A stretch of DNA of 63,643 bases, filler included, from Octopus bimaculoides (taxonomy: Eukaryota): the NCBI RefSeq assembly GCF_001194135.2. It is 6 parts of 6 records of this genome, joined end to end, with 100 filler letters (N's around TTAATTAATTAA, not from the genome) between each part and the next. Parts side by side here need not be neighbours in the genome. Positions count along the whole stretch, not along the records: positions 1 to 17,318 come from NC_069001.1; 5 more parts are not named here. One strand, given 5' to 3'. Made by a program: the position numbers and the translations under genes. Below are positions 4,506-5,486 of the stretch, piece after piece. The notes under the pieces are model-generated. The model made no database searches. It worked only from the letters and a program-made list of their open reading frames with translations, and was not told the DNA's origin. Position 1 is the stretch's first letter; each line of letters begins with the position of its first letter.

Positions 4506-4736
4506 ACACTCTGGAACCTAATTATACGGTGAAAGAAATTGATAGAGTAGGTATTTGACTTAAAAGGCGAAAAAAATGTACAAGGGTCAATTTGTTTGAC
4601 CAAACTCATCTAGTTACTTCTCTCATCTCTTATTGAGATTTCCTAACTAGCTACTTTGCTTGCTGCAAATCAGTGACCGATGGTCGCTTTACTTTCTATA
4701 TATTTTGCGAGCTGGAGCGGACTCTTGCTATCTCTC

Positions 4737-4808
4737 TAGCGGTCGAGTATTCACGACTGAAGATGGGCATAAATAGCTCGAAACCGATTCGGTCTCGTAA
4801 TACCGCTG
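4737..4808 (+). ncRNA. Type I hammerhead ribozyme, intact core, extended stem I
   Basis: Core CTGAAGA 4757-4763; stem II GGGC/GCTC (4765-68/4776-79, loop ATAAATA); GAAA 4780-83; stem III ACCGA-T-TCGGT; GTC triplet with predicted cleavage after 4794; stem I ACGA/TCGT, GTATT/AATAC, AGCG/CGCT. Confidence 0.88.
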
Positions 4809-5486
4809 TCTACTGGAGGATGGAACGGATTCGCTCCCCTTACTGGCAATATATACAGTATCCAGACTGTACCTATAACCAGGTGGCGGGAGATCTGGCT
4901 GGGATTTAAAACGTTAGAAAATGGAACAGTCATATTGATAAGGCAATTAGCATTACTAATATATATATATGTATGTGTGTATGTGTGTGTGTATGTGTGT
5001 GTGTGTGTGTGTGTTTAATAGCAATAATTCTAGGATGGAATTTATAAATATTTAATACATCGTTACGTACGTTTCCACAAATCACATGAGTTTGACATCA
5101 GAGTCGCTATCCTTTCAATTAGTACAGTATAGTTCGTATTATCCGTATTATTGCAGTATCGCCTGATGAAATGAATCAATGATGATGAGCAATCGGATGC
5201 CCAGAGATAATACGGACTACACTGTACTAATCCCAAGGATACTGACTCATCTCAAAATCATGTGATTCTTGGAAACGTACGTAGCGATGTGTTAAATATT
5301 TATAAACTCTGTCCTAGAATTATTGTTATTATATTTATCCCGCCTTATATCGGTATAACCGTGATGCAACTCTGAAAAACTGACCCACTAGTCAGTATCA
5401 TTAGACGGTAGCCGGCATAATGAAAAAAAAAGAGCTTTATTTACATACCCCTAGCGTTACCTTAAACGAATTTAAAAGATATATAT

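What the first reader, a model, noticed from the sequence alone, without database searches (positions are those of the whole stretch)
4697..4855. Intact type I hammerhead ribozyme at the tip of a ~160-nt rod fold: candidate cephalopod retrozyme/circRNA
Seen: every catalytic-core base is present (CUGAAGA, GAAA, GUC), and stems I-III pair. Pairing continues outward in the same register: 4725-4735 with 4815-4825 (imperfect), GGAGCGGA 4714-21 with TTCGCTCC 4830-37, TGC/GCA, and TATATAT 4697-4703 with ATATATA 4849-55. It sits in a ~330-bp GC-elevated island unrelated to the SINEs around it. Known: animal non-LTR retrozymes (coral, mussel, axolotl) and Schistosoma Sm-alpha are short repeats with type I HHRs that yield highly paired circular RNAs. 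Inference: this is an integrated retrozyme-like monomer or a domesticated intronic ribozyme. The 1-nt loop in stem III suggests it may cleave as a dimer.
Basis: partly seen in the sequence, partly recalled or inferred. Interest (0 to 1): 0.92.

Follow-up and report, generated by a model that had tools for sequence, protein, structure and literature searches.

The report
Solitary hammerhead ribozyme in an octopus genome
A complete self-cleaving hammerhead ribozyme motif sits at the tip of a roughly 157-nt RNA rod in a repeat-rich octopus sequence. It is most likely a lone copy of a known kind of ribozyme-carrying mobile element, so it is credible but not a new kind of thing.

Summary
On the + strand, 4753-4798 has all conserved hammerhead core bases, three helices of 4 bp each, and cleavage predicted after C4794. 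The flanks 4699-4752 and 4799-4855 extend helix I into an imperfect rod.

- An extra U (4764) lies between A9 and G10.1.
- Loop III is 3 nt, not 1.
- The GC-rich structured unit is about 150 bp, not 330 bp.

The motif alone is weak evidence. No Rfam family reaches its threshold (HH9: 19.5 bits against 52). Motifs this good arise by chance about 0.0007 times per window, roughly 130 per 2.7 Gb.

The flanks add independent support:
- The arm pairing of -37.9 kcal/mol was reached by none of 225 chance motifs and by 0.56% of same-geometry genomic pairs.
- Six G·U pairs and no A·C mismatches favour the ribozyme strand.
- No DNA-level inverted repeat is detectable.

The host is Octopus: a LINE ORF is 92% identical to an O. 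bimaculoides protein.

The retrozyme/circRNA reading is only partly supported. There is one copy in the window, no tandem partner and no Penelope ORF, and no homologues could be retrieved because no cephalopod genome is searchable here. One ribozyme cannot excise a circle.

Best reading: a solitary monomer of a retrozyme or Penelope-like-element lineage, a new member of a known kind.

The parts
4699..4752 (+). 5' arm of the rod, the distal extension of helix I. Includes GUAUU 4747-4751, which pairs with AAUAC 4799-4803, and the bulged C4752.
   Evidence: Hammerhead-constrained fold and pair list. Arm-arm duplex statistics.
4753..4756 (+). Helix I, 5' strand next to the core (ACGA). Pairs with 4795-4798.
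4757..4763 (+). Catalytic core C3-A9: CUGAAGA.
   Evidence: Rfam HH9 alignment.
4764..4764 (+). Extra unpaired U between A9 and G10.1, an insertion relative to the consensus core.
   Evidence: Shown as an insertion in the Rfam HH9 alignment. The descriptor hit requires the 1-nt insertion. An unpaired base at the 5' end of helix II is described as usual for Penelope-element hammerheads and present in some canonical ones (PMC4209133).
4765..4779 (+). Helix II (GGGC/GCUC, 4 bp with one G.U) capped by loop 2, AUAAAUA.
   Evidence: Hairpin energy -2.5 kcal/mol.
4780..4782 (+). Catalytic core G12-A13-A14: GAA.
4783..4793 (+). Helix III (A15.1-CCG / CGG-U16.1, 4 bp) capped by the 3-nt loop AUU. Near-palindromic.
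   Evidence: Hairpin -2.0 kcal/mol; two-copy duplex -14.3 kcal/mol.
4794..4795 (+). Predicted self-cleavage site: after C17 (C4794) and before U1.1 (U4795).
   Evidence: Position follows from the hammerhead consensus applied. Cleavage itself was not tested.
4795..4798 (+). Helix I, 3' strand next to the core (UCGU).
4799..4855 (+). 3' arm of the rod, the distal extension of helix I, ending in AUAUA.

Best explanation
This is a genuine type I hammerhead ribozyme embedded in a roughly 150-nt self-complementary RNA element in an Octopus genome. It is a solitary (monomeric) genomic copy of the lineage that includes animal non-LTR retrozymes and the terminal repeats of Penelope-like elements.

If the + strand is transcribed, the RNA folds into a three-way junction whose helix I continues as a long imperfect rod. 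It then cuts itself between C4794 and U4795 by the usual hammerhead transesterification, leaving a 2',3'-cyclic phosphate and a 5'-OH.

Because helix III is weak and near-palindromic, cleavage may be more efficient when two copies pair (double hammerhead).

This locus has only one ribozyme, so it can nick a transcript but cannot release or circularise a monomer. Circular RNAs would have to come from tandem copies elsewhere in the genome, if such copies exist.

Shown: the motif, the rod, strand-biased G.U pairing, single copy in the piece, and the octopus host.
Inferred: catalytic activity, retroelement origin, and the existence of other copies.
For: - All 13 conserved core positions and three 4-bp helices are present. 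It is the only descriptor hit in the piece.
- It aligns end to end (model positions 1-77) with Rfam Hammerhead_HH9, a type I animal hammerhead. The 6-position helix I, 4-bp helix II and an A-rich loop 2 are all in register. This matches the 'canonical' metazoan architecture of helix I 6 bp and helix II 4 bp described in PMC4209133.
- The arms outside the motif pair far better than chance: -37.9 kcal/mol for 50-nt arms, z -3.8 against shuffles, reached by 0.56% of genomic same-geometry pairs and by 0 of 225 chance motifs.
- The joint chance is about 4e-6 per window.
- The hammerhead-compatible rod lies within 1.7 kcal/mol of the minimum free energy fold.
- Six G.U pairs and no A.C 1x1 mismatches make the + strand fold 9 kcal/mol better than the - strand. 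This points to selection at the RNA level on the ribozyme's own strand.
- No DNA-level inverted repeat is detected at 4690-4860, whereas two real foldback elements nearby are found easily.
- The extra unpaired base 5' of helix II and the palindromic helix III are recorded traits of Penelope-associated and metazoan hammerheads (PMC4209133).
- Dispersed monomer copies of non-LTR retrozymes are documented (bioRxiv 10.64898/2026.07.22.740005).
- Cephalopod genomes are already known to carry hammerheads: 235 Rfam Hammerhead_1 hits in the giant squid (PMC6962438).
Against: - No Rfam hammerhead family reaches its gathering score. The best is 19.5 bits against 52, with E = 1.1 when the whole piece is searched.
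- Motifs of this quality are expected about 130 times by chance in a 2.7-Gb genome. Perreault et al. warn of exactly this (PMC3088659).
- Under their strict filter, the core insertion would disqualify this hit.
- No second copy, tandem partner or Penelope RT/GIY-YIG ORF is present in the piece.
- No homologue was found anywhere I could search. So there is no covariation, no copy number and no evidence of expression.
- GC content of 47-52% is above the <45% described for animal retrozymes (PMC7229834).
Confidence: 0.66

Rival explanations
1. Chance occurrence. A hammerhead-like string arose by accident in non-functional, unrelated sequence that happens to fold back on itself. It was never a ribozyme.
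For: - The Rfam score is far below threshold, and E is about 1 at window scale.
- The relaxed motif occurs 0.006 times per shuffled window and the strict motif 0.0007 times, which is tens to hundreds per cephalopod genome.
- The first-stage scan looked at an unknown number of windows.
- The core carries a 1-nt insertion.
- There are no homologues.
Against: - The joint probability of the motif plus the observed arm pairing is about 4e-6 per window, or about 0.7 per whole genome.
- The G.U bias favours the ribozyme strand.
- Helix lengths, loop 2 and the helix I internal loop fall in register with a real animal type I model.
Confidence: 0.13
2. A fragment of a Penelope-like element pseudo-LTR (solo pLTR) rather than a retrozyme monomer. 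The ribozyme is the one such elements carry in their terminal repeats, left behind after truncation or recombination.
For: - Penelope-like elements universally carry hammerheads in their pLTRs, usually with an unpaired base at the 5' end of helix II, as here (PMC4209133, PMC8557442).
- Retrozymes and pLTRs are sister sequences in Xenopus (bioRxiv 10.64898/2026.07.22.740005).
- Some Penelope-like clades target (TA)n, and the rod is bracketed by TATATAT and ATATATA (PMC8557442).
Against: - No RT or GIY-YIG remnant appears in any frame of the piece.
- Metazoan Penelope hammerheads are typically 'minimal': no or 1-bp helix III, helix II of 6-8 bp, helix I of 4-5 bp. This one has a canonical 4-bp helix II and a 4-bp capped helix III (PMC4209133).
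Confidence: 0.12
3. An exapted or domesticated ribozyme within a host transcript, analogous to the amniote intronic HH9/HH10 hammerheads. It would process or regulate an octopus pre-mRNA or lncRNA.
For: - The best Rfam match is to the HH9 intronic family.
- It is single copy in the piece.
- The motif is intact despite a decayed repeat neighbourhood.
Against: - No exon or gene is recognisable in the piece.
- The match is sub-threshold.
- Conservation across species is unknown.
- Non-LTR retrozyme copies are reported to be depleted from introns (bioRxiv 10.64898/2026.07.22.740005).
Confidence: 0.05
4. A foldback DNA element (MITE-like) whose palindromic arms create the rod, with the hammerhead string as a coincidence.
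For: - The piece contains true foldback elements at 5016-5331 and 7087-7378.
- TA-rich ends could be read as a TA target-site duplication.
Against: - No ungapped Watson-Crick inverted repeat of 10 nt or more is found at 4690-4860.
- The pairing is spread along the whole length with bulges and 6 G.U pairs, and is 9 kcal/mol weaker on the other strand.
- The termini pair poorly compared with MITE terminal inverted repeats.
Confidence: 0.04

Closest known systems
Animal non-LTR retrozymes (coral, mussel, axolotl; Cervera & de la Pena 2020, PMC7229834)
   Same: - Type I hammerhead with a capped helix II of 4 bp and a small palindromic helix III.
- The host sequence is a short, highly self-paired RNA of about 150-450 nt.
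- Dispersed monomer copies are known to exist alongside arrays.
   Different: - There is no tandem repeat at this locus.
- Copy number and circRNA expression are unknown.
- GC is 47-52% rather than <45%.
- The structured unit of about 145-159 nt is at the small end of the range.
- Helix III is longer (4 bp) than the 1-2 bp typical of metazoan motifs.
Hammerheads in pseudo-LTRs of Penelope-like elements (Cervera & de la Pena 2014, PMC4209133)
   Same: [quoted passage not shown]
- A palindromic helix III compatible with a dimeric active form.
- Association with a TA-rich insertion context.
   Different: - Penelope motifs are usually minimal, with little or no helix III, a long helix II and a short helix I.
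- No Penelope ORF lies nearby.
Rfam Hammerhead_HH9 (RF02275), amniote intronic type I hammerhead
   Same: - Full-length alignment with the same helix layout.
- Shared GAAACC...GGUC helix III frame.
- A UAC after a 6-position helix I.
- An A-rich loop 2.
   Different: - It scores 19.5 bits against a gathering score of 52.
- It has an extra U in the core.
- One C.A mismatch lies in helix I.
- The outer helix differs.
- There is no evidence of orthology or intronic location.
Schistosoma Sm-alpha and newt satellite 2 hammerheads
   Same: Type I topology in a short repeat-derived transcript. As I recall the Schistosoma ribozyme (from memory, not tested), its loop 2 also ends in AAAUA.
   Different: Those are high-copy SINE-like or satellite families with demonstrated cleavage. 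Here there is one copy and no activity data.

Membership tests
Hammerhead ribozyme (type I) | Conserved core: C3 U4 G5 A6 N7 G8 A9 / G12 A13 A14 / A15.1-U16.1 / H17 | tested here: met
   CUGAAGA 4757-4763, GAA 4780-4782, the A4783-U4793 pair and C4794. One extra U (4764) after A9 is a known natural variant (PMC4209133, citing De la Pena & Flores 2001). It would fail the strict filter of PMC3088659.
Hammerhead ribozyme (type I) | Three helices around the core, helix I open and helices II and III capped, with paired bases adjacent to the core | tested here: met
   Helices of 4, 4 and 4 bp. The 1.1-2.1 pair is U-A, 10.1-11.1 is G-C and 15.1-16.1 is A-U.
Hammerhead ribozyme (type I) | Reaches the curated Rfam gathering score of a hammerhead family | tested here: not met
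   No gathering-level hit. The best is HH9 at 19.5 bits against 52.
Hammerhead ribozyme (type I) | Loop 1 / loop 2 tertiary contact | tested here: inconclusive
   An internal loop or bulge lies 4-6 bp from the core and loop 2 (AUAAAUA) is A-rich, both in register with HH9. The thermodynamic fold pairs GUAUU with AAUAC instead. No 3D test is possible.
Hammerhead ribozyme (type I) | Site-specific self-cleavage | not testable with these tools
   Needs in vitro transcription and a cleavage assay.
Animal non-LTR retrozyme | Type I hammerhead inside a short, highly self-paired unit (about 150-450 nt) | tested here: met
   Rod of 55 pairs over 4699-4855. The true unit boundaries are unknown.
Animal non-LTR retrozyme | Head-to-tail tandem repeats (dimer or more), so that two ribozymes flank a monomer | tested here: not met
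   Self-BLAST, repeat finder and TRF find no second copy in the 17.3-kb piece. Documented 'monomer derivatives' would fit (bioRxiv 10.64898/2026.07.22.740005).
Animal non-LTR retrozyme | Multi-copy family in the genome | not testable with these tools
   No cephalopod genome is searchable. ORF-proxy protein searches were empty. Pattern scans of metagenome, prokaryote and viral collections returned only bacterial coding-sequence coincidences.
Animal non-LTR retrozyme | Low GC (<45%) | tested here: not met
   47.2% for 4697-4855 and 51.7% for 4704-4848, against 37.7% for the piece.
Animal non-LTR retrozyme | Expressed as small circular RNA | not testable with these tools
   Needs RNA-seq back-splice reads or 2D-PAGE Northern blots.
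Penelope-like element pLTR | Adjacent RT plus GIY-YIG ORF, or paired terminal repeats | tested here: not met
   No such ORF appears in six-frame segments, and Pfam is empty. No second repeat.
Penelope-like element pLTR | Minimal hammerhead architecture (helix III absent or 1 bp, helix II 6-8 bp, bulged base 5' of helix II) | tested here: inconclusive
   The bulged base is present (U4764), but helix II is 4 bp and helix III is a capped 4-bp stem (compared with PMC4209133).
HH9/HH10-type domesticated intronic hammerhead | Orthologous conservation in an intron across species | not testable with these tools
   No gene context is recognisable and no orthologous loci could be retrieved.

The most novel reading that the evidence does not exclude
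Octopus genomes harbour an active family of unusually small (about 150 nt) non-LTR retrozymes that current Rfam thresholds miss, expressed as rod-like circular RNAs. This locus would be a monomer inserted into a (TA)n site, with its ends at the terminal loop opposite the ribozyme. That would make it the first characterised cephalopod retrozyme. It would also be a long double-stranded RNA that could interact with the very active cephalopod A-to-I editing machinery.
Probability: 0.2. Interest if true: 0.55.

Novelty: new member of a known kind. Interest (0 to 1): 0.36.

Why it matters
If active, this adds cephalopods to the animal lineages with canonical-type hammerheads in retrozyme-like elements. 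It would also show that such copies fall well below Rfam gathering scores, so standard annotation undercounts them.

Two features would be worth a specialist's look:
- The small size of the structured unit.
- Its bracketing by TA repeats, which bears on how these elements integrate.

A rod-like RNA of this kind in an octopus would also be a candidate ADAR substrate.

None of this changes current understanding of hammerheads or retrozymes. As a single untested locus, its value is as a lead for a genome-wide search.

Tried and rejected
1. Rfam at gathering thresholds over the whole piece gave nothing. At E-value level only HH9 matched, at 19.5 bits. The other sub-threshold hits near the locus (CRISPR-DR45, psbNH, speF, S15) are noise.

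2. Homologue hunting through spurious ORFs. I searched the 78-aa + strand ORF spanning the element, and a mixed alignment of the five other frame segments, against 5.8 billion proteins. There were no hits. This negative is weak, because octopus genomic ORFs of this kind are evidently not in that collection. Even the window's own ORFs and the UniRef octopus hit are not on record.

3. I scanned metagenome, prokaryotic-genome and viral contigs with the pattern CTGANGA-N(10-26)-CGAAACCGATTCGGTC. There were 33 loci, all bacterial coding-region coincidences without helices I or II, mostly one conserved Actinomycetota gene.

4. tRNA-like SINE head next to the ribozyme, as in Sm-alpha: ARAGORN found none.

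5. Larger 330-450-nt structured unit: the flanks are not significantly structured. In the 331- and 450-nt contexts the minimum free energy fold rearranges, although the centroid of the 450-nt fold keeps the rod.

6. DNA foldback origin: no inverted repeat is detectable.

7. Penelope ORF remnants: none found.

8. Literature: no paper in the searchable library describes hammerheads or retrozymes of Octopus specifically. The only cephalopod record is a count of Rfam hits in the giant squid.

Full report
**What is there.** The + strand between 4753 and 4798 reads ACGA-CUGAAGA-U-GGGC-AUAAAUA-GCUC-GAA-ACCG-AUU-CGGU-C|UCGU. Mapped on the hammerhead consensus, the parts are:
- Helix I: 4753-4756 with 4795-4798.
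- Core C3-A9: 4757-4763.
- Helix II: 4765-4768 with 4776-4779, including G10.1-C11.1 and one G.U pair, with a 7-nt loop.
- Core G12-A14: 4780-4782.
- Helix III: 4783-4786 with 4790-4793, starting with A15.1-U16.1, with a 3-nt loop.
- C17: 4794.

Cleavage would fall between 4794 and 4795. Helix I is open while helices II and III are capped, so this is a type I hammerhead.

My descriptor (helix I of at least 4 bp, helices II and III of at least 3 bp, optional 1-nt insertion after A9) finds exactly this one site on either strand of the 17.3-kb piece.

An extra unpaired U4764 sits between A9 and G10.1. Loop III is AUU, not a single nucleotide.

**The rod.** With the hammerhead helices enforced and the core kept single-stranded, 4697-4855 folds into 55 base pairs at -51.5 kcal/mol. 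That is 1.7 kcal/mol above the unconstrained minimum of -53.2. Helix I continues outward through:
- GUAUU/AAUAC, after a bulged C4752.
- CG/CG and CGG/CUG.
- A 6-bp and a 5-bp block, 4728-4739 with 4813-4823.
- UCU/GGA.
- GGAGCGGA/UUCGCUCC, 4714-4721 with 4830-4837.
- AG/CU, UUGC/GCAA and UAUAU/AUAUA.

The structured, GC-rich part is about 145-159 nt (52-47% GC against 38% for the piece). The flanks 4511-4696 and 4856-4960 are unique in the piece but not significantly structured. The '330-bp island' overstates the unit.

**Is it more than chance?** The motif alone is not strong evidence.
- No Rfam family reaches its gathering score.
- The best hit is Hammerhead_HH9 at 19.5 bits against 52. Its E-value is 0.027 when only 401 nt are searched and 1.1 for the whole piece.
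- In 38,822 dinucleotide shuffles of the piece, the relaxed motif appears 0.0059 times per window. A motif with helices of at least 4/4/4 bp appears 0.0007 times per window.
- That corresponds to roughly a hundred or more accidental sites in a cephalopod-sized genome. Perreault et al. raise exactly this caveat (PMC3088659).

What lifts this site above that background is evidence not used to detect it.
1. The 50-nt arms directly outside the 4-bp helix I pair at -37.9 kcal/mol. That is z = -3.8 against shuffled arms. It is reached by 0.56% of same-geometry pairs across the real piece, and those are microsatellites and true palindromes. None of 225 chance motifs reached it (mean -13.8, sd 4.2, minimum -27.6). 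The joint expectation is about 4e-6 per window, or about 0.7 per whole genome.
2. The fold contains six G.U pairs and no A.C 1x1 mismatches. The + strand folds 9 kcal/mol better than the - strand. A decaying DNA palindrome should produce G.U and A.C equally, so this bias points to RNA-level constraint on the ribozyme's strand (about p = 0.02-0.03).
3. No ungapped Watson-Crick inverted repeat of 10 nt or more exists at 4690-4860. The same tool easily finds the neighbouring foldback elements at 5016-5331 and 7087-7378.
4. The HH9 alignment is end to end. It puts the 6-position helix I, the UAC after it, the 4-bp helix II and the A-rich loop 2 in register. This matches the 'canonical' metazoan architecture, helix I 6 bp and helix II 4 bp, described in PMC4209133.

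I therefore take it as a genuine hammerhead-bearing element with about two-thirds confidence. Pure chance gets about 0.13.

**Context and host.** The piece is a gap-ridden draft scaffold with seven N runs. It is packed with microsatellites and SINE-like copies.
- On the left, the element is bounded by SINE fragments at 4174-4274 and 4425-4510.
- On the right, it is bounded by (TA)n(TG)n at 4960-5014 and a foldback element.
- A LINE 3' ORF at 12377-12601 is 92% identical to an Octopus bimaculoides UniRef protein, so the cephalopod attribution is right.
- No exon, tRNA-like head or Penelope RT/GIY-YIG remnant is recognisable.
- The hammerhead region has no second copy in the piece.

**Search for relatives.** No cephalopod genome is reachable with the available tools.
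- I tried spurious ORFs over the element as proxies in the 5.8-billion-protein collection. I searched one frame, then the other five as a mixed profile, and found nothing.
- Exact look-ups show that octopus genomic ORFs are not on record there, so this negative carries little weight.
- A pattern scan for the core plus helix III in metagenome, prokaryote and viral contigs returned 33 loci. All are bacterial coding-sequence coincidences lacking helices I and II.
- Copy number, tandem arrays, empty sites and covariation, the decisive evidence, therefore remain untested.

**How it most likely works.** When the + strand is transcribed, the three-way junction forms at the tip of the rod and the RNA cleaves itself after C4794.
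- Helix III is only -2.0 kcal/mol as a hairpin and is near-palindromic.
- Two copies can form a 10-bp extended helix III with a central U.U at -14.3 kcal/mol.
- This is the dimeric 'double hammerhead' arrangement described for most metazoan type I motifs and for Penelope-element motifs (PMC4209133, PMC6155905).
- With three G-C pairs in helix III, monomer activity is also plausible.
- The long helix I would hold the two products together after cleavage. This favours religation in a circular context.
- This locus has only one ribozyme and so cannot release a monomer or a circle.

**Comparison with known systems.** The closest kinds are animal non-LTR retrozymes (PMC7229834) and the hammerheads of Penelope-like element pseudo-LTRs (PMC4209133). 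A 2026 preprint argues that the two are sister sequences, and it documents dispersed monomer copies of retrozymes (10.64898/2026.07.22.740005).
- Shared with retrozymes: a canonical-type type I hammerhead and a short, highly paired unit.
- Shared with Penelope motifs: the unpaired base 5' of helix II, the palindromic helix III and a TA-rich insertion context.
- Against retrozyme membership at this locus: no tandem repeat, and GC of 47-52% rather than <45%.
- Against the Penelope test: no ORF or second repeat, and the motif is not 'minimal'.

Hammerheads have already been counted in a cephalopod genome, with 235 Rfam Hammerhead_1 hits in the giant squid (PMC6962438). I found no paper describing octopus hammerheads or cephalopod retrozymes.

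**Verdict.**
Retrozyme or circRNA status and domestication are unproven, and this locus alone cannot make a circle.
- It is a new member of a known kind, of moderate-to-low interest (0.36). It is mainly a lead for a genome-wide search and a simple cleavage assay.

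Noticed in passing
window 5016-5331: Foldback / TIR-type element immediately right of the (TA)n(TG)n microsatellite. The arms 5016-5101 and 5246-5331 are 87% complementary, with a second nested pair at 5101-5143 and 5206-5248. It looks like a MITE.
   Followed up: partly
window 7087-7378: Nested palindrome and the most stable fold in the piece (-103.9 kcal/mol for the 159-nt window starting at 7156). 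It abuts the N gap at 7433. It partly overlaps a direct repeat pair, 6875-6956 and 7333-7414.
   Followed up: partly
window 1915-2053, 4174-4274, 4425-4510, 5489-5900, 8500-8892, 10205-10629, 12109-12350: At least six partial copies, in both orientations, of one SINE-like repeat family at 70-95% identity. They typically carry or abut a microsatellite. No tRNA-like head was detected by ARAGORN.
   Followed up: partly
window 12377-12601 and 13525-13852 (also 10800-10972, - strand): Remnants of a LINE 3' ORF. The 74-aa ORF is 92% identical to UniRef A0A0L8I0U5 (Octopus bimaculoides) and 55-68% identical to many ORFs from other invertebrates such as shrimp and beetle. There is no Pfam match. This identifies the host lineage.
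   Followed up: yes
window 2673-3119: Very long (TGA)n microsatellite of about 149 units at 85% purity. It produces long low-complexity ORFs on both strands and sub-threshold C/D-box snoRNA matches that are artefacts.
   Followed up: no
window 1130-1887, 4331-4396, 5923-6131, 7433-8026, 10647-10783, 14134-14643, 15475-15912: Seven assembly gaps (N runs), several flanked on both sides by (TA)n. The draft assembly breaks at TA microsatellites, so tandem arrays of short repeats could be collapsed or missing.
   Followed up: no
window 10072-10180, 15018-15107, 11326-11396, 16519-16613: Sub-threshold Rfam microRNA matches (mir-297, mir-466, mir-1277, MIR161 and others). All lie on TG/TA/TATC microsatellites or palindromic low-complexity sequence, so they are artefacts rather than miRNA genes.
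   Followed up: partly
L004, L006-L008, L010, L012-L016, L018, L021-L023, L027, L029-L032: The string CTGAAGA...CGAAACCGATTCGGTC recurs in one conserved coding region of Mycobacterium/Actinomycetota genomes and soil metagenomes. It has no helix I or II complementarity. It illustrates how easily partial hammerhead strings arise by chance.
   Followed up: yes
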